Shown: piece after piece, positions 55,516-64,000 of the stretch
How positions within the stretch are numbered: position 1 is the first letter of the stretch
Layout: every line of letters starts with the position of its first letter
Program-made: the position numbers and the translations under genes
The notes under the pieces: generated by a model
What the model was told of the DNA's origin: nothing
The model's database searches: none
What the model saw: only the letters and a program-made list of their open reading frames with translations
Assembly: GCF_002113885.1 (NCBI RefSeq)
Contig: NW_018404943.1
Span: 582,363 to 646,362 of the forward strand
Reading direction: 5' to 3'
Length of the DNA: 64,000 nucleotides
Origin: Mizuhopecten yessoensis
Lineage: Eukaryota

Positions 55516-56201
55516 TTTATATTTTTCTATTTCGGATTTTTCCTTTGACGCTAGCTACTTATATTTTTATATTTGGGAAGCTTATATTACATATGTTAGA
55601 TCGATGGTGACCTCCATACTTTCCCGAACTAGTCGGGAGACATCATGACAGGTACTGCCACATGGAATCTAAAAAGTTCTTGCCCTTCGGGTAGCATGGT
55701 GACTTTCTCTTTTGTTTTGGGTTGTCGTCAGTACCTGTTGTTGTCAAATTTGGGTACTGATTATGTGTCTTGTGTTTTGACGATAATGTATATTTATTAT
55801 GTGCAAGTATGTTTCTTAAACAAAGTGGGGTGGGGGTGTTTTCATTCTAATCCAATATCAGTTTACAGTCACGTGTTCTTACTTCATAATTTTTCCGTAT
55901 TTAGTTCAATATGTTTCTTGCACAACCCATTCACTCTTTTTCTTCATAGCTCATTAAAGGTATCCCGTACAGCCTGTATGATGTGAGGTAAATAAACCTT
56001 ATACACGTATATTGTTTATCACACTTTGTTGACAGTTTTATACAATCAATATTCGCAGTTGTTTAGGAGAAAGCGCTCTGCCTTCCGAATTCCGGTAATG
56101 TCGCTTTCAGATGTGCTGTTTTTATATATAAAAGACGAGAGCAATTCGTTGTGCACGTCGATCAAAGGGCGATGCAGATTTTTTATCTTCCGCCGATTAA
56201 C

Positions 56202-56382
56202 TTGAGGTTTTTGAAGTAAAACCAATTTTCATGATGTAATACTTACCATAACTTTAGTATGCATATACAATACCTACACCCATCTTTGTAGCCCAAAAAC
56301 AAAAGATTCAAATATCCCTACCTCCCTACCGTGACGTAACCTCTATCTCGATGACAGAGCCACGGAGTGATCTCCCTTCCTC
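56202..56382 (-). repeat. DIRS 3' inverted terminal repeat with unique outer extension
   Basis: 56243-56382 is the exact reverse complement of 62821-62960; 56202-56242 is the extension complementary to the ICR. Confidence 0.95.
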
Positions 56383-56454
56383 AAACCCCCTTTTATGGAG
56401 CCTAAAGGCAGCCAGGATGAGGAGGCAAGGGGAGGAATACAGGGTGGGACTCCA

Positions 56455-56546
56455 TAAAGTTATGGTAAGTATTACATCATGAAAATTGGTTTTACTTCAA
56501 AAACCTCAATTTCATTTCAGTAATAATTACCATAACTTTAGTATGC
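56455..56546 (-). repeat. DIRS internal complementary region (ICR)
   Basis: 56455-56509 = reverse complement of 56202-56256; 56510-56546 = reverse complement of 62941-62977; reproduces the circle junction ...ACCTCAA|TTTCATTTC... Confidence 0.95.
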
Positions 56547-56750
56547 GAATTCGTCTTACCGTAGTGGAGGCTTCGAATCCAGGCAGACCAGGCTGACGGA
56601 ACAAACTCGAGACATGCTCAAGGTAGGGAAAAGGTTCAAGGAACCCCCCTAATAAAGCCCCGAAAGTAATTAAAAAATGGAAAACCTCCCCGTGAAACGA
56701 GCAGGTGTACCACCGTGGTGCCTGATAGCATACTATTTAAAATCACTGAA

Positions 56751-59700
56751 TTACTGTGGAGGAACAGCCACAGACTGTGCAACCACCACCGGTCCAAGGG
56801 AATACAATCCATCAGAATGAGAGGCCAAGGACCGGAGATAAAAATCCGTGAAGGTAGTCTGTCCGCGCCAGAAAGCTGCGGACATGACCTCCTGAAAGGG
56901 GGACCCATTGAGGAGGGCCCATGACGCAGCAAGGGCCCTGATCTCATGAGCTCTCACCTTATACAACGCCCGAACCTGATCATCCGAGTGGTCGTAACCG
57001 TACTTGATGACCTGACAGATCCATCTAGACACTGACTGAGAAGAGATATCCTGTTGACCCTGCTTAATGGGCAAAAACAGACGAGATCGAGGACCTCGCC
57101 CCCCCCTGGTTTTATCGAGGTAAAACCTAAGCGCCCGACAGGGACAGAGCAACCTATCCCGTTCCTCAGCTCCAACGAAGGCAGTCAAAGACGGAATCTT
57201 AATCGGATCGGGCGAGAAGCCAGGAACCTGATTCTTAGCCATAAAGGCAGGATCAGTGAGAAGGGTAACGGCAGAGTAATTCCTGGACCATCGGAGGCAA
57301 GAGGGGTGAGAAGACAAGGCATGAATCTCACTCCTCCTTCGACCTGAGGCCAGGGCAACAAGGAATACCACCTTGTAAGTAACAAACTTCAAGGAGGCAG
57401 ACGCTAAAGGCTCATAAGGTGCCCGCATCAGCGATTCGAGCACCAGTGGCAAATTCCACTGCGGAGCCAACTGCCGGACCCTAGGCCTGTCCAACCCAAA
57501 CCCCCTAATCAAGGCAGAAAGAGAGGAGGACGAGCCTACCTCCGACCTACCATGAACAGAGAGAACACTAGCAATGGCCGTGCGATAACCAGCGATAGTG
57601 CCAGGGGCAAGATTGCGGTCCCTAAACAGCCAAAGAAGGAAGTCCGCAATCACCTGGACAGTAGCCTTGATCGGATCAACCTTCCTGCCGACACACCAAT
57701 CACAGTAAATCTTCCATCGTGACTGGTAGACGGCAGATGAGGAAGCCCTAATTGATCGAGCGATGCGATCTGACACGTCCCTAGAAAAGCCCGCCTGAGC
57801 GAGGCCTCCTGAGATAGCTTCCACGCGTGAAGGTGGAGGATCTCCGGACGAGAGTGCATCGTCCTGGAACGAGGCTGGCGAAGGAGGTTCGCTCTGAGAG
57901 GAAGAGCCAGGGGCTCTTCCACCAGAAGCGACAAAAGCTCCGGAAACCAAGGCTGCCTCGGCCACAGGGGCGCTATCAGGAGGAGGGAACACTGATGCTC
58001 CCGAAACTTCTGCAGCACCCTGCCCACCATGTTGAAGGGTGGGAATGCATATGCATGCATTCCCTCCCAATCCAGAGACAGAGCGTCCACGGCCCAAGCC
58101 CTTGGATCTGGTACCGGAGAGACAAACGTTGGCAACTGATTGTTCAGTGAAGTGGCGAACAGGTCTATGTGAGGCCTGTCCCACACCTGACAAATTCCCA
58201 CGAAAATCGAGGGATTCAGTTGCCACTCTGTCAAAACCGGCTGGCGGCGCCTGGAAAGAGTATCCGCCAGAACATTCAACCTGCCTGGCAGATGCTTGAC
58301 ACAAATTGTCAACTGCATTTCCTGACATAGAAGCAGAATGCGGATAGCGAGGGCACACAGGGTGTGAGACCTGGTTCCCCCCTGTCTCTCCAGATACGCG
58401 ACAACCGTAGTGTTGTCCGTAGCCACACAAACCACCTTGGAATGCAGGATCTCCCGAAAAGACTGCAGAGCCAACAGAACAGCCCTCATCTCGAGCACAT
58501 TGCTGTGCTCCGAGAGCTGTTCCCCAGACCACTCCCCCGACTGGCAACGCCCGTCGAGATAAGCTCCCCACCCTGTCATGGATGCATCCGTGTACAGGGT
58601 CATAGTGGGAACTGGCTTGGACAAAGGAACCCCTCGGAGAACATTGTCCTGATGAGTCCACCAGCGTGCGTACTCCTTGACCGACTGGTTCAGAGGAAGC
58701 AAGGCTTCCCAATCCCTTGAAGAAGGGACCCAGTTGGCAAGGAGAAACATCTGGAGAGGCCTGATGTGAAGTCTCCCTAAGGGGACCACATCGGCCAGGG
58801 CGTTGAGATATCCCAGAAAACTGAGAAACCAACGTACCTGGACTTGAGACCGGCCGATAAAGGTCAGAGCAAAAGCCCTGGCCTTCTCGAACTTCTCCAT
58901 CGGTGGAAGGGCGATGCCCTGAACCGTATTGAAACGGTTCCCCAGAAAAACAAAATCCTGAGATGGGGAAACCTCCGACTTTTCTCTGGAAGGAATGAAG
59001 CCGACCTTGAGTAAGAGTTTCAGAACCAACCGGGTGACCTGTACCAGAGACTCTCTCACTAGGTGGAGCATGAGGGAGTCGTCGAAATAGATGTGAACAT
59101 CTATTCCTCGAGAGTGCAGGAATCCCACGACCACCTGCAGCAGCTTGGTGAAAACCAAAGGTGCAGTCGTGAGCCCGAACGGCATGGCCCGGAACTGGAA
59201 GACCTTTCCGTTGCAAGTAAAACGGAGGTACTTCCGTGCCGACTTCTTGATGGGGATGTGGAAGTAGGCGTCCTTTAGATCTACTGAAGTCGCCCACATT
59301 CCCTCTCTCACGGAGGCGATAATACCCCGAGGAGTCTCCATCTTGAAGTGAGGAGAATCTACGTGCTTGTTGAAGGCACTTAGATCTATGATGGGACGCC
59401 ACGCCCCGGACTTCTTCCGAACCAGAAACATTCTGGAGTAGAACCCGGGAGTGCATCCCGACATAGGAACCTCCTCGACCGCGCCCTTGGAAAGCATGGT
59501 CCTTACTTCCTCCTGGAGCGCCAGAGCCTTTTCCGGATCCCCCGGTGGAGGAAAAAAGATTGGCTCTGACGCTAAGGGCGGATCCCGCACTAGCGGAATG
59601 CCTAACCCCTCCTTGATCACAGACAAGGTCCATGCGTCTTCCGTAATTTCCTTCCACTCTGGAAGGAAAGCAGAAAGACGACCCCCCACAGGAAGATCTG

Positions 59701-59801
59701 GTCGAGGCAGATCGAGACCTTGCCAGGCAAGAGAATCGTCTGCTGACCCGAAGCCTAATCCTGCGGGAGAAGGACCTAAGCTTGAGCCGAGAGGACTGCA
59801 T
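56751..59801 (-). CDS. DIRS ORF3: tyrosine recombinase (C-terminal ~350 aa) with long N-terminal part overlapping ORF2
   Basis: RRRSEIHAL (R), LCPCRAL..Y, HEIRA (HxxR), W...TTF..FY (catalytic Tyr). Confidence 0.93.
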   Translation of the reverse strand: MQSSRLKLRSFSRRIRLRVSRRFSCLARSRSASTRSSCGGSSFCFPSRVEGNYGRRMDLVCDQGGVRHSASAGSALSVRANLFSSTGGSGKGSGAPGGSKDHAFQGRGRGGSYVGMHSRVLLQNVSGSEEVRGVASHHRSKCLQQARRFSSLQDGDSSGYYRLRERGNVGDFSRSKGRLLPHPHQEVGTEVPPFYLQRKGLPVPGHAVRAHDCTFGFHQAAAGGRGIPALSRNRCSHLFRRLPHAPPSERVSGTGHPVGSETLTQGRLHSFQRKVGGFPISGFCFSGEPFQYGSGHRPSTDGEVREGQGFCSDLYRPVSSPGTLVSQFSGISQRPGRCGPLRETSHQASPDVSPCQLGPFFKGLGSLASSEPVGQGVRTLVDSSGQCSPRGSFVQASSHYDPVHGCIHDRVGSLSRRALPVGGVVWGTALGAQQCARDEGCSVGSAVFSGDPAFQGGLCGYGQHYGCRVSGETGGNQVSHPVCPRYPHSASMSGNAVDNLCQASARQVECSGGYSFQAPPAGFDRVATESLDFRGNLSGVGQASHRPVRHFTEQSVANVCLSGTRSKGLGRGRSVSGLGGNACICIPTLQHGGQGAAEVSGASVFPPPDSAPVAEAALVSGAFVASGGRAPGSSSQSEPPSPASFQDDALSSGDPPPSRVEAISGGLAQAGFSRDVSDRIARSIRASSSAVYQSRWKIYCDWCVGRKVDPIKATVQVIADFLLWLFRDRNLAPGTIAGYRTAIASVLSVHGRSEVGSSSSLSALIRGFGLDRPRVRQLAPQWNLPLVLESLMRAPYEPLASASLKFVTYKVVFLVALASGRRRSEIHALSSHPSCLRWSRNYSAVTLLTDPAFMAKNQVPGFSPDPIKIPSLTAFVGAEERDRLLCPCRALRFYLDKTRGGRGPRSRLFLPIKQGQQDISSQSVSRWICQVIKYGYDHSDDQVRALYKVRAHEIRALAASWALLNGSPFQEVMSAAFWRGQTTFTDFYLRSLASHSDGLYSLGPVVVAQSVAVPPQ

Positions 59802-59836
59802 TCCTCCCGGCCAAACTCGTCGTCTGACACGACCAA
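57650..59836 (-). CDS. DIRS ORF2: reverse transcriptase + RNase H + methyltransferase-like domain
   Basis: VGGRL..F...W; GFYSRMFLV.KK.G.WRPIIDL; DLKDAYFH; MPFGL..AP..FTK; YFDD; TDAS..GWGA, N.LE, TDNTT, ADTLSR (RNase H); IDLFAT...DAL..DW...YAFPPF (MT-like). Frame is open from 60031; first ATG only at 59497. Confidence 0.95.
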   Translation of the reverse strand: MVVSDDEFGREECSPLGSSLGPSPAGLGFGSADDSLAWQGLDLPRPDLPVGGRLSAFLPEWKEITEDAWTLSVIKEGLGIPLVRDPPLASEPIFFPPPGDPEKALALQEEVRTMLSKGAVEEVPMSGCTPGFYSRMFLVRKKSGAWRPIIDLSAFNKHVDSPHFKMETPRGIIASVREGMWATSVDLKDAYFHIPIKKSARKYLRFTCNGKVFQFRAMPFGLTTAPLVFTKLLQVVVGFLHSRGIDVHIYFDDSLMLHLVRESLVQVTRLVLKLLLKVGFIPSREKSEVSPSQDFVFLGNRFNTVQGIALPPMEKFEKARAFALTFIGRSQVQVRWFLSFLGYLNALADVVPLGRLHIRPLQMFLLANWVPSSRDWEALLPLNQSVKEYARWWTHQDNVLRGVPLSKPVPTMTLYTDASMTGWGAYLDGRCQSGEWSGEQLSEHSNVLEMRAVLLALQSFREILHSKVVCVATDNTTVVAYLERQGGTRSHTLCALAIRILLLCQEMQLTICVKHLPGRLNVLADTLSRRRQPVLTEWQLNPSIFVGICQVWDRPHIDLFATSLNNQLPTFVSPVPDPRAWAVDALSLDWEGMHAYAFPPFNMVGRVLQKFREHQCSLLLIAPLWPRQPWFPELLSLLVEEPLALPLRANLLRQPRSRTMHSRPEILHLHAWKLSQEASLRRAFLGTCQIASLDQLGLPHLPSTSHDGRFTVIGVSAGRLIRSRLLSR

Positions 59837-59852
59837 GGAGGGAAGAAAAGAG

Positions 59853-62393
59853 TCAGGAACCCTTCTTCTTACCCCCAGGAGGGTTCTTACCCTTCTTACC
59901 CTTCCATTTGTTGCCCTTGAAGGGAGGCTTATACTTGGGCTGCGCAGAGGACTGCGAAGCCGAAGGTTTAGCCTTCTTCTTAGGAGGCGCTGACCCCTGC
60001 GAGGTACTGGCCTTCTCAGCCTGAATCCTCTTCACCAGAAGTGCAGAGGCGACCGAGTCCTCCTTCAAATCCTTCTGAACAGAAGGAAGGGCCCCTCCAA
60101 AAAGAGTGGACCCTGAGAAGGGGGCAGTCAACAGTCTGGAACGGTAAGGCTCATCGACCGGGCGATTTTTCAAAACTGAAAACCGCCTAGCCAACAAGAC
60201 ATTGACGAGGGATGACACCTGTAAAGCTGCCAGCGCTCTCAATGCCCCGTTCAGGGCAGAGGTCACTCTGTCCTGGATGTCGGCCTGCTCTGTCTCGGTA
60301 ATCCGACCCTCAGGCAAGTCGGATACCCTATATAGACAAACCGTCAAGTAGTCTATATACGACAGAATCTGGATGGAGAGACGCAGCAGTCTCTCCATCT
60401 TGTGGTGTTCTTTGGGACCGAACACCACCTGGTCCACCGATTTACCGGGCCAAGCTGCAAGTTCCCTCGATTCCAGCTTAGCTGGTTGAGGGGCAAGCAG
60501 ACCATCATGTGTGGCATAGTCAGTGGCGTGCACCTCTGACAAATCGCCAACACTGAGCTGCAACCCAGCATACCCAGGACTACGGGTTGAAGAAGAATTC
60601 TTCCCTAAAACCCGAGACTGGGCGGTGGCCAGAGCTGAAGACACAATGGTGCCTTCTGGCAGAGAGCGGTCCGACCGAGCGGACACCCGAGGAGCCACCA
60701 AAGAACCCAAAAGGGTGGTGGACTCGGGGACAGATGATGCCGAAGGTGGTGGGCAAACCTCCTCCCCAAGAATCCGGGAAACGTCAGCCCTAAGGCCCCG
60801 CATACCGGATAACACATGCTGGGCCTCAACCTCAGCAGCCTCAGGGTCTCCCTCATCCTGGAAGTCCTCCTCTGAGGGCAAGCCCTCCTGAGGACTGTCG
60901 TCAGACGACTCGGAAAGACCAGCGTCTATATCCGAACAACCAGGTGAAAGATGAACAACATCATTGTCCTCTGCCATACCCGCGCCCTCAACGTCCATAG
61001 CCTCCACACCATCCAGACCAGAAGCCTGGGGCGGAGGAAATGGGCCAGCCAGAGGGGCCAACCCGAGAGAAGGCTCCCCGTACCGGCGTTTAGGTGCAGT
61101 GCGCCTAACGGCCGTGGCTGTAGGTTTAGGCTTAGTAGCCAAAACCCTACCCTTGGACCCAGAGACCAACGAGCCTGCCCGAGAGGCAGAAGTCCTAAAG
61201 GTCCGACACACCTTCTTAGGACCGGCCGATAAGGCCCCCGAAGTAGCAGAAAGTTGGGGGGGGTCAACAGAACTGCTAACACGTCTCCGCGAGGGAGAGA
61301 CCAAACCCCAAGGATTCCATGACGGAAATGCCATGGGGTTAAACCCATATCCCGGAGGATAGGGGAAAGGTCCCGCGGGCTGGGAGTGACCCCAGAACTG
61401 GCCAAACTGGCCTGCCTGAGACTGGGGCTGGCCAACTTGCCCAAAGGGCGAAGGTGGACCGCCACTCCCTCCAGGTGGAAACCCGGACATGTACGGGCTA
61501 AGCCCGTAACTGCCGGGATGCTGTCGCAACCCAAAACCATCCGCAGGCTGGTAAGGGCGGCCCAAGGATGGTTGCCCGCAGGCACCCGTATACCCTAAGC
61601 CAGGGGAAAACGGAGGCCGGAAACCGGCCCCCTGTCCAGCAAACCCAACCCCTGGGGGGAAACCCCCCAGGTTCCCAGAAGAATGAAACTCGGGACCGGA
61701 CCTAATAGGACCGGGTCCGGGTAACTGACCGGGAGGGTATGCCTGACCAGCATTGATGCCGGGATTAGTGAGCTGCGCGTCACTAATCCCGGTAGACACA
61801 GACAATCCCGAAAGAAAGTCTGTTGTCACACCAGGACCTGAACCCGAAAGAACAGGCCCGGCACCAAGACTGTCCCCAACGACCGCACCACCTGGAATGC
61901 CGGGATCACTGACAGAGTCAGTGACCGGCGGCCGGTAGTCCCTACCCGAAGGCAAGCGCGAAAGCTTACGGGCGTTCCCGGCCAATTCGACCCTTGGCTG
62001 TGCCAAGCCAGGGTCAGGCTGCCCCTCCCCTACTCCAGGGAGTTCCTGGACAGGAAGGGCCACCCCCTGCTCACGAGAGGGACTTGCCGAAGCAAGACCC
62101 CCCGAGACAGGAACAGAGACAGTACCACCAGACCCCAGAGAGCTGGTGGCACGACCCCTACCTCTCTGCTTCCCTCGCTTACCGGAAGAAACAGACGAAT
62201 CTGTCTTACGGTAAGTTGAGGGTAGCTTTGGAACAATGAAGTCCTTGCCCTGAGATTTTGACTGTGAACAAAGTTCACAAGGCGAAACCTCACTGCAAGG
62301 ACGACACCTGGGACAGGCATCATGAGGGTCCCGTTCCACAAAGAAATGGGAACACCCATGAGCACTACCTCGTCGCTGTCCCGACCGAGACAT
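59853..62393 (-). CDS. DIRS ORF1, Gag-like protein (846 aa from ATG at 62393)
   Basis: N-terminal Cys/His cluster (C..F....DPHDACPRC.PC....PCELC), Gly/Pro-rich region, acidic tract, C-terminal LARR...L..PF.G..LFG motif and basic tail, as in DIRS ORF1. Confidence 0.9.
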   Translation of the reverse strand: MSRSGQRRGSAHGCSHFFVERDPHDACPRCRPCSEVSPCELCSQSKSQGKDFIVPKLPSTYRKTDSSVSSGKRGKQRGRGRATSSLGSGGTVSVPVSGGLASASPSREQGVALPVQELPGVGEGQPDPGLAQPRVELAGNARKLSRLPSGRDYRPPVTDSVSDPGIPGGAVVGDSLGAGPVLSGSGPGVTTDFLSGLSVSTGISDAQLTNPGINAGQAYPPGQLPGPGPIRSGPEFHSSGNLGGFPPGVGFAGQGAGFRPPFSPGLGYTGACGQPSLGRPYQPADGFGLRQHPGSYGLSPYMSGFPPGGSGGPPSPFGQVGQPQSQAGQFGQFWGHSQPAGPFPYPPGYGFNPMAFPSWNPWGLVSPSRRRVSSSVDPPQLSATSGALSAGPKKVCRTFRTSASRAGSLVSGSKGRVLATKPKPTATAVRRTAPKRRYGEPSLGLAPLAGPFPPPQASGLDGVEAMDVEGAGMAEDNDVVHLSPGCSDIDAGLSESSDDSPQEGLPSEEDFQDEGDPEAAEVEAQHVLSGMRGLRADVSRILGEEVCPPPSASSVPESTTLLGSLVAPRVSARSDRSLPEGTIVSSALATAQSRVLGKNSSSTRSPGYAGLQLSVGDLSEVHATDYATHDGLLAPQPAKLESRELAAWPGKSVDQVVFGPKEHHKMERLLRLSIQILSYIDYLTVCLYRVSDLPEGRITETEQADIQDRVTSALNGALRALAALQVSSLVNVLLARRFSVLKNRPVDEPYRSRLLTAPFSGSTLFGGALPSVQKDLKEDSVASALLVKRIQAEKASTSQGSAPPKKKAKPSASQSSAQPKYKPPFKGNKWKGKKGKNPPGGKKKGS

Positions 62394-62820
62394 ACCCTCC
62401 AAAGCGAACGTAAACAAAAAATTTACAAGCAGATAAAACGGGAAAATAAGGATAAAATACGATAGTACAAAGTACGCAACGTAGAAAGAATTTCACCCGT
62501 AATATAAATCAGAAAACGGTTAAAATAAATAACGTTTGCCGAAACAAACAACCGTCACCGAAATAAACAGAGGTCGGAAATTAACCCACGATAATGGCGG
62601 ACCGTGGCACACCACCGGCACACGTGGAGTAAAATAACCGGCCGTAAAAGGCACAAAAATAATTTTCAACAACAATTAGTTATATCAATAAGGGCAGATG
62701 GGTAAAAGGCACACAAACTGCGCAAAAATATGAGTTGACACTCAAACCAAACCGACAAAACAAAGTTTTGAATTGGAGCAAGCTCCGTGCGTCAGCATGC
62801 AGCAGGCGCCATAAAAGGAA

Positions 62821-62977
62821 GAGGAAGGGAGATCACTCCGTGGCTCTGTCATCGAGATAGAGGTTACGTCACGGTAGGGAGGTAGGGATATTTGAATCTT
62901 TTGTTTTTGGGCTACAAAGATGGGTGTAGGTATTGTATATGCATACTAAAGTTATGGTAATTATTACTGAAATGAAA
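62821..62977 (-). repeat. DIRS 5' inverted terminal repeat
   Basis: See the matching ITR at 56243-56382; element sense begins TTTCATTTCAG. Confidence 0.95.
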
Positions 62978-63346
62978 TCGATCTTTGCGTACAACATGAC
63001 CAACGGGGTTGGCTTACTACTAAGCAGTATAATAAACCTGGCGATTCGAATTCCCCTTTCTTGACTGTATCATCCATACACCAGCAATCCTTCCTCCCTT
63101 TTTGAGGTGTTTAGGTTTCACAGTTGATTCTATATTCACGGATGTGATCCTCAGTGATGGATATTGAATGCTGAAAGTCAAATATAAACTATAGGATTGA
63201 GTAAGATGCAGGTTGACTATGGGGGAAATGTCACTGGAAATGATCCTTAGTCCATATCTTGTCTTAAAGTTTAAAAGATTATGAGTTCACATTATGGTAA
63301 TATTTACATTTCCGTATATTCCAGTTTTGTTCTTTTAAACTCAAAA

Positions 63347-64000
63347 GGATGGTATTATACTGTGTCTTCACAAGGGTGGAATTATACTGTGTCGTCACAA
63401 GGGTGGGATTACACTGTGTCGTCACAAGGTTGGGATTATACTGTGTCGTCACAAGGGTGGGATTAAACTGTGTCGTCACAAGGGTGGAATTACACTGTGT
63501 CGTCACAAGGGTGGGATTACACTGTGTCGTCACAAGGGTGGGATTACAATGTGTCGTCACAAGGGTGGTATTATACTGTGTCGTCACAAGGGTGGTTTTA
63601 TACTGTGTCTTCACAAGGGTGGTACGTTACTGTGTCGTCACAAGGGTGGTATTATACTGTGTCGTCACAAGGGTAGTATTATACTGTGTCGTCACAAGGG
63701 TGGATTACACTGTGTCGTCACAAGGGTGGTACGTTACTGTGTCGTCACAAGGGATGTACGATACTGTGTCGTCACAAGGGTGGTACTATACTGTGTCGTC
63801 ACAAGGGTGGTATTATACTGTGTCTTCACAAGGGTGGGTTACACTGTGTCGTCACAAGGGTCGTACGTTACTGTGTCGTCACAAGGGATGTACGATACTG
63901 TGTCGTCACAAGGGTGGTACGATACTGTGTCGTCACAAGGGTGGTACTATACTGTGTCGTCACAAGGGTGGTTCTGTACTGTGTCGTCACAAGGGTGGTA
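63347..64000. repeat. 27-bp minisatellite (GGGTGGTATTATACTGTGTCGTCACAA), >=24 copies, runs off the window end
   Basis: 9-aa periodicity in the spurious ORFs; direct tandem units. Confidence 0.97.

What the first reader, a model, noticed from the sequence alone, without database searches (positions are those of the whole stretch)
59801..59870. Candidate three-way recoding switch at the DIRS gag stop: UCC-UGA-C with RT in +1 frame and recombinase in 0 frame
Seen: ORF1 ends GGT TCC TGA CTC (TGA at 59855-59853). (a) The YR ORF3 is in the same frame; only this TGA and 17 sense codons (LFSSLLGRVRRRVWPGG) precede its ATG at 59801. (b) The RT ORF2 is in the +1 frame, open from 60031, and has no ATG until 59497, downstream of the conserved VGGRL..F...W block, so a conventional AUG start would miss that block. 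(c) A +1 shift at TCC-T-GAC gives Ser-Asp. Established: metazoan ornithine decarboxylase antizyme shifts +1 at UCC-UGA giving Ser-Asp, and UGA-C is the leakiest stop context. Inference: one stop codon may give Gag (846 aa, termination), Gag-RT-RH-MT (1580 aa, +1 shift) and Gag-YR (1880 aa, readthrough). In-frame gag/YR arrangements may already be noted for DIRS; I do not know of an antizyme-type shift described for them.
Basis: partly seen in the sequence, partly recalled or inferred. Interest (0 to 1): 0.85.

Follow-up and report, generated by a model that had tools for sequence, protein, structure and literature searches.

The report
Three-way decoding stop in DIRS retrotransposons
In a young scallop DIRS1-like retrotransposon, and in more than 70 relatives, a single weak stop codon at the end of gag sits where both downstream genes begin, so the same codon probably yields Gag alone, a Gag-recombinase fusion by readthrough and a Gag-reverse-transcriptase fusion by a +1 shift; this would explain the long-noted giant ORF overlap of these elements, but no experiment has tested it.

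Summary
On the minus strand gag ends GGT TCC TGA CTC (TGA 59855-59853). RT/RNaseH/methyltransferase lies in the +1 frame. The gag frame reopens right after the stop and runs 1033 codons to the tyrosine recombinase (YR). At least 40 copies in this scallop genome are identical here.

Comparison supports the core idea and changes its emphasis.
- Of 92 related elements, 79 have gag in frame 0 and RT in +1.
- In 73 of those 79, frame 0 stays open from the gag stop across the whole RT gene. Nine tested elements have 0 stops where 24-38 are expected.
- Among 71 unique junctions the gag stop is UGA (53) or UAG (18), never UAA. It is followed by C (48) or G (18).
- The RT frame is open across the stop in 71/71. 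In 30/71 it has no AUG before the conserved VGGRL block.
- The possible shift window narrows to about -7 to +4 codons around the stop.
- Four families show a permuted layout (gag-stop-RT in frame, YR in -1) that follows the same logic.

UCC-UGA is conserved only in scallop lineages. No antizyme-like flanking signals or RNA structure were found. RNA data show no splicing, at low depth.

Verdict: a probable three-way recoding site, inferred computationally, confidence about 0.5. I found no description of it in the papers I could search.

The parts
62821..62986 (-). 5' (left) terminus. The inverted terminal repeat arm is 62821-62967. The outermost 62941-62986 is complementary to the internal complementary region.
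   Evidence: I1 arms 56236-56382 / 62821-62967, 147 nt, 99% complementary; I3 arms 56501-56546 / 62941-62986.
59853..62393 (-). gag-like ORF1, 846 codons from the first ATG (62393) to the TGA. The tail is basic and rich in K and G.
   Evidence: Weak LAP2alpha match (E 0.0069), as reported for Xenopus DIRS gag (PMC9210276).
59850..59858 (-). Proposed branch point UCC UGA CUC. UCC is the last sense codon, UGA is the gag stop (59855-59853), and C is the +4 base.
   Evidence: The motif is TTCC-TGA-CT in five of the six scallop lineages aligned and TTCT-TGA-CT in the sixth (L032). UGA-C or UAG-G in 56 of 71 relatives; UAA in none.
57650..59854 (-). RT / RNase H / methyltransferase ORF2 in the +1 frame. 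It has 734 codons counted from GAC at 59854. The frame is open from 60031, the first ATG is at 59497, and the VGGRL block starts at 59689.
   Evidence: RVT_1 E 5e-22; RT_RNaseH E 1.3e-4; Dam E 0.059.
57786..59852 (-). Overprinted 'bridge' (X): about 690 codons of the gag frame read across the RT gene. It is rich in S, G and R, holds 4 Met, and has no stop. Its first ATG is at 59801.
   Evidence: 0 stops vs 32.8 expected; composition.
56751..57785 (-). Tyrosine recombinase part of the frame-0 ORF. Motifs seen: RRRSE (R), HEIR (HxxR) and DFYLR (Y). The three catalytic motifs lie downstream of the RT stop; the N-terminal SAM-like part still overlaps the end of the RT ORF (57650-57785).
   Evidence: motif positions 838, 969, 1003 of the frame-0 ORF; Phage_int_SAM_4, E 0.12; tblastn to relatives' YR.
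56455..56546 (-). Internal complementary region (ICR), complementary to both termini.
   Evidence: I2 (56196-56256 / 56455-56515, 97%) and I3.
56196..56382 (-). 3' (right) terminus. The inverted terminal repeat arm is 56236-56382. The terminal extension 56196-56256 is complementary to the ICR.

Best explanation
The element is an intact, recently active DIRS1-like tyrosine-recombinase retrotransposon of a scallop. I propose that ribosomes translating gag meet one deliberately weak stop (UCC UGA C here) and take one of three routes.
1. Most terminate and release Gag.
2. A fraction read the stop as a sense codon and stay in frame 0. They translate about 690 codons of low-complexity 'bridge' overprinted on the RT gene and end in the recombinase, giving Gag-X-YR of about 1880 aa.
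3. A fraction shift +1 at or within a few codons of the stop (Ser then Asp here), giving Gag-RT/RNaseH/MT of about 1580 aa.

DIRS elements have no protease and a eukaryotic mRNA gives no other access to 3' ORFs. On this model both enzymes are therefore made as alternative Gag fusions. The well-known 'long ORF overlap' would be the price of carrying ribosomes in frame 0 across RT.

Shown here: the frames, their conservation, stop-free overprinting, the bias toward weak stops, the absence of AUGs, and many identical copies in the genome (read as recent activity). Inferred: that readthrough and the frameshift actually occur, their site, their rates, and the Gag-fusion rationale.
For: Window anatomy.

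Activity: at least 40 copies are identical at the junction, and many have intact RT frames.

Overprinted frame kept open by selection: 0 stops against 24-38 expected in each of 9 elements, with 0 of 500 shuffles reaching 0. The third frame has 20-57 stops.

Large comparison:
- 79 of 92 elements have gag in frame 0 and RT in +1.
- In 73 of 79, frame 0 is open from the gag stop to the RT stop or the contig end. The median is 1004 codons in 51 complete cases.
- Chance of a stop-free linker is about 0.38 per element, giving binomial P 2e-23.
- First AUG in frame 0 lies more than 100 codons downstream in 27/71 and more than 300 in 12/71. L032 has none in 758 codons.

Weak-stop bias: UGA 53, UAG 18, UAA 0. 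UGAC occurs 43/71, against 4/112 for the RT and YR stops of the same elements (Fisher P 2e-18). UAA is 0/71 against 29/112 (P 1e-7). The only informative flanking position is +4, with +5 U weaker.

RT frame: open across the stop in 71/71. There is no AUG before VGGRL in 30/71. The overlap is as short as 7 codons (L039) and VGGRL is as close as 4 codons after the stop (L104), so a shared shift site lies within about -7 to +4 codons. The upstream +1 openness is no more than composition predicts.

Permuted layout in 4 families (L074/75, L076, L111, L129): gag-stop-RT is in frame, and the YR frame (-1) opens only 10-12 codons before the stop in three of them. The logic is the same with the roles swapped.

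Precedent: an OAZ1 reporter changed to UCC_UGA_C terminates less and gives more of both +1 frameshifting and readthrough (PMC9841425). The host itself uses UCC UGA for antizyme.

No splicing seen: contigs from three runs of three studies are collinear across the junction, and raw RNA reads show no joint or indel there.
Against: There is no direct evidence of translation: no ribosome profiling, peptides or reporters.

No conserved last sense codon or slippery motif appears outside the scallop lineages. No stimulatory RNA structure was found: downstream z is -1.3 against -1.0 to -1.26 elsewhere, Y-tract pairing is at background, and the alignment fold has no covariation support. There is no Rfam hit. 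The +1 step therefore rests on frame logic alone.

RT always being +1 may partly be inheritance, because overlapping frames are locked together.

Two apparently intact relatives break frame-0 continuity: L063 has stops at codons 26 and 82, and L064 at codon 224.

RNA depth at the junction was only about 1.5 reads, the library looks unstranded, and the contig runs are only guessed to be RNA. Minor spliced or edited forms are not excluded.

GGTAAG near the gag end followed by a pyrimidine tract and AG after the stop looks like a mini-intron.

A 1880-aa fusion with a 690-aa low-complexity spacer is an odd protein.
Confidence: 0.5

Rival explanations
1. Only the readthrough is programmed, giving Gag-X-YR. 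RT is made independently of gag-translating ribosomes, by non-AUG or internal initiation or by reinitiation after termination at the gag stop.
For: The weak-stop bias and the single-stop continuity speak directly to frame 0 only. No conserved shift-prone codon or stimulator was found. 41 of 71 elements have some AUG in the RT frame before VGGRL.
Against: 30 of 71 have no such AUG, and where one exists its position varies from -178 to +39 codons. The RT frame is open across the stop in 71/71, and the conserved RT block always starts after the stop. gag is 850 codons with many AUGs, so scanning cannot reach RT. No AUG overlaps or abuts the stop, as stop-restart systems have. The permuted families place RT directly behind the stop in frame, so RT can be fed by gag ribosomes.
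Confidence: 0.2
2. Spliced or subgenomic RNAs supply ORF2 and/or ORF3. One version is a very short intron that removes the stop: GGTAAG donor in the gag tail, then a pyrimidine tract and AG acceptor after the stop. Another is an acceptor just after the stop joined to a 5' leader.
For: GGTAAG or GGTAGG lies in the last 10-50 nt of gag in most close relatives, followed by a pyrimidine-rich tract (10-18 of 18 nt) and a YAG. In the window a 49-nt GT..AG span would join gag to the RT frame (read).
Against: The same construction in family B (L054) is 54 nt and would join gag to frame 0 instead, so it is inconsistent between families. Introns of 49-54 nt are unusually short for an animal. No joint at the junction appears in the RNA reads, and contigs of three runs are collinear, though depth is low. 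No genomic copy carries the 49-nt-deleted form. Splicing does not explain the absence of UAA and the UGA-C bias, nor why exactly one stop separates the frames.
Confidence: 0.1
3. The stop is removed at the RNA level, either by A-to-I editing (UAG or UGA to UGG, as at the hepatitis delta amber/W site) or by transcriptional slippage that changes the frame.
For: Only UGA and UAG occur. Both can become UGG by a single A-to-I change, whereas UAA would need two. A predicted hairpin spans the stop in the scallop lineages.
Against: The A of UGA follows G, which is a poor ADAR context (my own knowledge). The strong +4 C preference fits termination efficiency rather than editing. RNA reads and contigs show no changed, missing or added letters at 59853-59855, at low depth. 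No conserved homopolymer run exists. The hairpin has no covariation support.
Confidence: 0.04
4. Nothing is recoded. The open gag frame across RT is an untranslated by-product, and the junction pattern is inherited chance.
For: All evidence is comparative, and related elements share ancestry.
Against: Stop avoidance is specific to one phase: 0 stops against 24-38 expected in one frame, and 20-57 stops in the other. It holds in elements only 36-50% identical in RT. The stop type and the neighbouring codons have changed many times while staying weak. A permuted layout keeps the same logic.
Confidence: 0.02

Closest known systems
DIRS1-like retrotransposons with 'long ORF overlap' (Piednoel et al. 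2011, PMC3266345; Ribeiro et al. 2019, PMC6681497)
   Same: Same element type: gag, RT/RNaseH/MT, YR, inverted terminal repeats and an internal complementary region. The extensive overlap of the YR ORF with pol, with the catalytic YR domain in the non-overlapping 3' end, is already described.
   Different: Those papers report the overlap without a mechanism and found none in the molluscs they sampled. Here the overlap is complete, starts at the gag stop, is in frame with gag, and is tied to a weak stop in about 70 elements. I could not read the older subscription papers (Goodwin & Poulter 2001; Poulter & Goodwin 2005; Poulter & Butler 2015), so prior mention cannot be excluded.
Gammaretrovirus (MuLV) gag-pol readthrough and alphavirus UGA-C readthrough
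   Same: A single in-frame weak stop (UAG-G or UGA-C) between a structural ORF and a long downstream ORF that lacks its own start. The result would be a minority fusion product.
   Different: No downstream pseudoknot or stem-loop was detected. The readthrough product here would carry the recombinase through an overprinted spacer. A second frame also starts at the same stop.
Ornithine decarboxylase antizyme +1 frameshift (UCC UGA)
   Same: The window and its scallop relatives have UCC (UCU) UGA with the next gene in +1, giving Ser-Asp. The host's own antizyme uses UCC UGA U.
   Different: No antizyme 5' element or 3' pseudoknot is present. UCC is not conserved across the wider clade. The +4 base is C, not U. 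Polyamine control is unknown.
Ty1 / Ty3 gag-pol +1 frameshifting
   Same: A retrotransposon with pol in +1 of gag, with the shift driven by a slowly decoded A-site codon.
   Different: In Ty elements the slow codon is a rare sense codon inside a 38-nt overlap with a defined heptamer. Here the slow codon would be the stop itself and no heptamer is conserved.
OAZ1 UCC_UGA_C reporter (Loughran et al. 2022, PMC9841425)
   Same: Shows experimentally that at UCC_UGA_C termination drops and both +1 frameshifting and readthrough rise. This is a three-way competition at one stop.
   Different: It is an engineered variant in human cells that keeps the antizyme pseudoknot. It is not a natural gene using both products.

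Membership tests
DIRS1-like tyrosine-recombinase retrotransposon | Ty3/gypsy-type reverse transcriptase plus RNase H | tested here: met
   RVT_1 E 5.2e-22 (79 bits, cut-off 29.6). RT_RNaseH E 1.3e-4, just under its cut-off. 1801 homologues found.
DIRS1-like tyrosine-recombinase retrotransposon | Methyltransferase-like domain after RNase H | tested here: inconclusive
   Dam PF05869, E 0.059 and 13.5 bits, below its cut-off. The position fits.
DIRS1-like tyrosine-recombinase retrotransposon | Tyrosine recombinase (R..HxxR..Y) in place of a DDE integrase; no protease | tested here: met
   Motifs RRRSE, HEIR and DFYLR occur in order in the 3' non-overlapping part. tblastn finds 32-93% identity to relatives' YR. 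Only a weak Pfam SAM-like hit (E 0.12) and no PDB sequence hit. No protease or integrase family was found.
DIRS1-like tyrosine-recombinase retrotransposon | Inverted terminal repeats plus an internal complementary region matching both termini | tested here: met
   147-nt ITRs, 99% complementary. The ICR at 56455-56546 is complementary to both ends.
Antizyme-type +1 programmed frameshift | UCC UGA at the end of ORF1 with ORF2 in +1 | tested here: met
   Met in the window and in the scallop lineages. Only 9 of 71 junctions in the wider clade have UCC.
Antizyme-type +1 programmed frameshift | Conserved 5' stimulator and 3' pseudoknot or stem flanking the site | tested here: not met
   No Rfam match. 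The flanks are unlike the host antizyme site. No excess structure or pairing.
Antizyme-type +1 programmed frameshift | Frameshift occurs and responds to polyamines | not testable with these tools
   Needs reporters or ribosome profiling.
Programmed stop-codon readthrough (retroviral or alphaviral type) | Single in-frame stop between two long ORFs, with the downstream ORF lacking its own conserved start | tested here: met
   73 of 79 elements. Median 1004 codons after the stop. The first AUG is variable and often hundreds of codons away.
Programmed stop-codon readthrough (retroviral or alphaviral type) | Weak stop context (UGA-C, UAG-G/C; not UAA) | tested here: met
   UGAC 43, UAGG 13, UAGC 5, UAA 0 of 71. 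The RT and YR stops of the same elements differ strongly.
Programmed stop-codon readthrough (retroviral or alphaviral type) | Stimulatory RNA structure a few nt downstream | tested here: inconclusive
   Mean z of the +3..+93 window is -1.30, no different from other windows of the element. No Rfam hit.

The most novel reading that the evidence does not exclude
One weak stop codon is an ancient, programmed three-way branch point in DIRS1-like retrotransposons. Termination, readthrough and a +1 shift (in a minority layout, readthrough and a -1 shift) produce Gag, Gag-bridge-recombinase and Gag-RT from one mRNA. The roughly 700-codon overprinted frame exists only to carry ribosomes to the recombinase. 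This would be the first natural case of two different recoding events, both with functional products, at a single stop.
Probability: 0.45. Interest if true: 0.9.

Novelty: new variant of a known kind. Interest (0 to 1): 0.8.

Why it matters
How DIRS elements translate their second and third genes has not been explained in the papers I could read. The 'long ORF overlap' has been catalogued since the 2000s without a reason.

A single stop that feeds both downstream frames would give that reason. It would also set the Gag:RT:YR ratio in an element that has no protease, and add a natural example of readthrough and frameshifting competing at one codon. So far that competition has been seen only in engineered antizyme reporters.

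The hypothesis is directly testable with short reporter constructs, because the signal appears to be local: the stop plus one or two following bases.

For annotation, RT and YR ORFs of these elements should not be expected to start with AUG.

Tried and rejected
1. RNA structure as a stimulator.
   - Folds of the 60 and 120 nt after the stop in 9 elements gave only moderate z.
   - Pairing of the post-stop pyrimidine tract with downstream purine tracts is at background in the scallop families.
   - Over 71 elements the window after the stop is no more structured than other windows.
   - A window centred on the stop has mean z -0.75.
   - An alignment fold of six scallop-lineage junctions predicts a hairpin with the stop at its tip, but with weak energy and no covariation support.
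2. Rfam on 59400-60200: only chance-level hits.
3. Mini-intron idea. The 49-nt (window) and 54-nt (L054) versions give different frames. An exact-pattern search for the 49-nt-deleted form found no copy in the genome.
4. Shift site upstream in the overlap. The +1 openness upstream of the stop is no more than synonymous shuffles of the gag tail give.
5. Selection test on which frame is coding just after the stop. Genomic copies are identical. Other pairs are too diverged or gapped in the linker. In a hand count from the translations, window versus Argopecten gives similar identity in both frames (20/41 and 24/40). No conclusion.
6. 2A-like NPGP peptides that might separate the fusions: present in only 4 of 71 elements, at unrelated places.
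7. L031 (88% relative) has an N gap at the gag end and was not used. L037, L052 (first copy), L053, L056, L057 and L058-L061 are decayed or rearranged copies, used only for the junction motif.
8. Earlier notes of this scan: nothing on this place or topic.
9. Literature. Five full-text searches and targeted reading of four DIRS papers found no recoding proposal for DIRS. Two key subscription papers were not held.
10. A PDB sequence search with the YR part found nothing.

Full report
**1. What is in the window**

On the minus strand lies a complete DIRS1-like retrotransposon of about 6.8 kb (56196-62986).
- It has 147-nt inverted terminal repeats, 99% complementary, and an internal region (56455-56546) complementary to both termini.
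- ORF1 (gag-like, 846 codons from the ATG at 62393) ends GGT TCC TGA CTC, with TGA at 59855-59853.
- ORF2 is in the +1 frame. It carries RVT_1 (E 5e-22), an RNase H match and a weak Dam-like match.
- ORF2's frame is open from 60031. Its first ATG is at 59497, 120 codons after the gag stop and 64 codons after the conserved VGGRL block.
- The gag frame reopens immediately after the TGA and runs 1033 codons to 56751.
- The last ~345 codons of that frame encode the tyrosine recombinase, with R, HxxR and Y motifs that all lie downstream of the RT stop.
- The first ~690 codons are a low-complexity reading of the RT gene in another frame, rich in S, G and R.

**2. The copy is young and the host is a scallop**

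At least 40 places in the same 988-Mb assembly are 100% identical over 59500-60200. Dozens have the intact 793-codon RT frame. The assembly holds proteins named Mizuhopecten yessoensis at 99-100% identity, and the nearest named relatives are from Argopecten and Ylistrum. Two further families of the same kind are also present in many identical copies: L054 (75% RT identity) and L055 (68%). The frame arrangement is therefore that of working elements, not of decay.

**3. The overprinted frame is kept open by selection**

I shuffled synonymous codons within the RT gene in nine elements whose RT is 44-100% identical to the window's.
- The gag frame has 0 stops where 24-38 are expected.
- None of 500 shuffles per element reaches 0.
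- The third frame has 20-57 stops.

The overlap itself is known. About half of described DIRS1-like elements have it, 'none in Mollusca' among those sampled in 2011, and no mechanism is given (PMC3266345; PMC6681497).

**4. Both downstream frames converge on the gag stop**

I collected relatives from three sources: assemblies that encode close RT homologues, the host genome, and a metagenome scan with an alignment of RT N-termini (A1). I then analysed all junctions with one script.

Layout:
- Of 92 elements whose RT N-terminus is on the contig, 79 have a gag-like ORF ending just upstream of VGGRL with RT in +1.
- In 73 of these 79, the gag frame stays open from the gag stop to the RT stop or the contig end.
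- In the 51 complete cases it runs a median of 1004 codons.
- Given the stop density of that frame, a stop-free linker between the gag stop and VGGRL has a chance of about 0.38 per element. That gives P about 2e-23 for the set, uncorrected for relatedness.
- The first AUG of frame 0 lies more than 100 codons downstream in 27 of 71 unique junctions and more than 300 in 12. L032 has none in 758 codons.

AUG initiation therefore cannot explain why the frame is open right from the stop.

**5. The stop is always a weak one**

| Stop | UGA | UAG | UAA | UGAC |
|---|---|---|---|---|
| gag (71 unique junctions) | 53 | 18 | 0 | 43 |
| RT (63) | 12 | 38 | 13 | 2 |
| YR (49) | 15 | 18 | 16 | 2 |

- After the gag stop the next base is C in 48, G in 18, U in 4 and A in 1. 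UAGG occurs 13 times.
- 28 of the UGA stops are followed by CU[C/U/A].
- Fisher P is 1e-7 for UAA and 2e-18 for UGAC, comparing gag stops with RT and YR stops.
- The only clearly informative flanking position is +4, with +5 U weaker.
- UGA-C and UAG-G are the classic leaky contexts (established knowledge).

**6. The RT frame**

- It is open across the gag stop in 71 of 71 junctions.
- The overlap can be as short as 7 codons (L039) or 10-11 (L139, L134).
- VGGRL can begin as soon as 4 codons after the stop (L104) or 7-8 (L137, L141, L125).
- The conserved RT sequence always starts after the stop, while the basic gag tail runs up to it.
- If the entry point is the same in all elements, it lies within about -7 to +4 codons of the stop. 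The stop is the only conserved feature there.
- 30 of 71 elements have no AUG in the RT frame before VGGRL. Where one exists its position is not conserved.
- The long +1 openness upstream of the stop is what the K/G/S-rich gag tail gives by composition.

**7. A permuted layout with the same logic**

Four families (L074/L075, L076, L111, L129) have gag and RT in the same frame, separated by one stop. Their long YR frame is in -1 and opens only 10-12 codons before that stop in three of the four. Whichever gene sits in frame with gag, the other one starts at the same place. This is hard to explain unless both are fed by ribosomes arriving from gag.

**8. How far the antizyme analogy goes**

In the scallop lineages, from Mizuhopecten (three families), Argopecten, Ylistrum and two metagenome contigs, the junction is TTCC-TGA-CT in five of the six aligned and TTCT-TGA-CT in the sixth. 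This holds although the gag tails are otherwise poorly conserved. The host's antizyme gene has the canonical ...UGG UGC UCC UGA U....

The analogy stops there.
- The flanks differ from the host antizyme site.
- Rfam finds no antizyme frameshift element.
- In the wider clade the last sense codon is CAA, AAA, UCC, CCC, AAG and many others.

An experimental precedent does exist for the proposed competition. Changing the human OAZ1 site to UCC_UGA_C lowers termination and raises both +1 frameshifting and readthrough (PMC9841425).

**9. RNA evidence**

- One raw RNA-seq run of the same species label covers the whole element at low depth on both read orientations, with about 1.5 reads at the junction.
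- It shows no joint, changed letter or indel at the junction.
- Its only joint is a 31-nt skip inside gag (61407-61439, 3 reads).
- Contigs from three further runs of three studies, whose RNA nature is only guessed, are collinear across the junction.

This gives no support for splicing, editing or slippage, but it is too shallow to exclude minor forms.

**10. Alternatives considered**

- A mini-intron (GGTAAG in the gag tail, then a pyrimidine tract and AG after the stop) would be 49 nt in the window and join gag to RT. It would be 54 nt in family B and join gag to frame 0. No processed copy exists in the genome.
- A-to-I editing of the stop fits the absence of UAA but not the UGA and +4 C preference.
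- Independent initiation of RT remains the most serious rival for the +1 branch.
- No RNA structure test gave a signal above the general background of the element.

**11. Verdict**

The idea that one stop feeds three products is well supported by frame logic across about 80 elements, with two changes of emphasis:
- The conserved signal is a weak stop, not an antizyme cassette.
- The phenomenon is a property of a large DIRS1-like clade, not of this copy.

My estimates are about 0.7 that frame 0 is reached by translational readthrough, about 0.6 that RT is reached by a +1 shift at or next to the stop, and about 0.5 for both together.

I found no description of this in the open literature I could search.

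Noticed in passing
L074/L075, L076, L111, L129 (metagenome contigs): A permuted DIRS layout. gag and RT are in one frame separated by a single stop (UAA-C, UAG-C, UGA-G, UGA-C). The ~1000-codon YR frame is in -1 and opens 10-12 codons before that stop in three of the four families. No classical X_XXY_YYZ slippery heptamer was seen in the short overlap.
   Followed up: partly
window 59823-59885 (-) and the same place in L065, L054, L055: The purine-rich gag tail (GGT AAG AAG ...) can pair with the pyrimidine tract after the stop. This gives a predicted hairpin with UUCC UGA at its tip (-31 kcal/mol for 83 nt in the window). An alignment fold gives weak energy and no covariation support, and across 71 elements the z-score is ordinary.
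   Followed up: partly
window 59812-59872 (-); L054 junction: GGTAAG near the gag end, then a pyrimidine tract, then AG resembles a very short intron. It is 49 nt in the window (would join gag to RT) and 54 nt in family B (would join gag to frame 0). No spliced reads and no processed genomic copy were found.
   Followed up: partly
window 63260-63800: A tandem array of a 27-nt unit (13-15 or more copies, 70-93% alike) lies next to the 5' end of the element and runs to at least 63800.
   Followed up: no
window 61407-61439: Three RNA reads from three start points skip 31 nt inside gag. This is probably a deletion variant among the many copies rather than splicing (ends TG..TT).
   Followed up: no
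G000:C857 (L054) and G000:C107 (L055): Two more DIRS1-like families in the same genome (RT 75% and 68% identical to the window's). Each has many identical copies, the same three-frame layout and UCC UGA CU at the gag stop.
   Followed up: yes
L062 (G000:C2088, minus strand): The host's antizyme gene: ORF1 ends ...GPGPQWCS with UGC UCC UGA U, and the +1 frame continues DEPR.... This is the canonical metazoan shift site.
   Followed up: partly
P0031, P0050, P0104: RT proteins 45-48% identical to this element are filed in public databases under bacterial metagenome-assembled genomes (Candidatus Thiodiazotropha, which I recall as clam symbionts, and a Dehalococcoidia bin). They are most likely host retrotransposon DNA binned by mistake.
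   Followed up: no
L063 and L064 (RT 44% and 43% identical): Two high-copy relatives with intact RT have extra stops in the gag frame after the gag stop: codons 26 and 82 in L063, codon 224 in L064. They are either copy-specific mutations or real exceptions to the single-stop rule.
   Followed up: no
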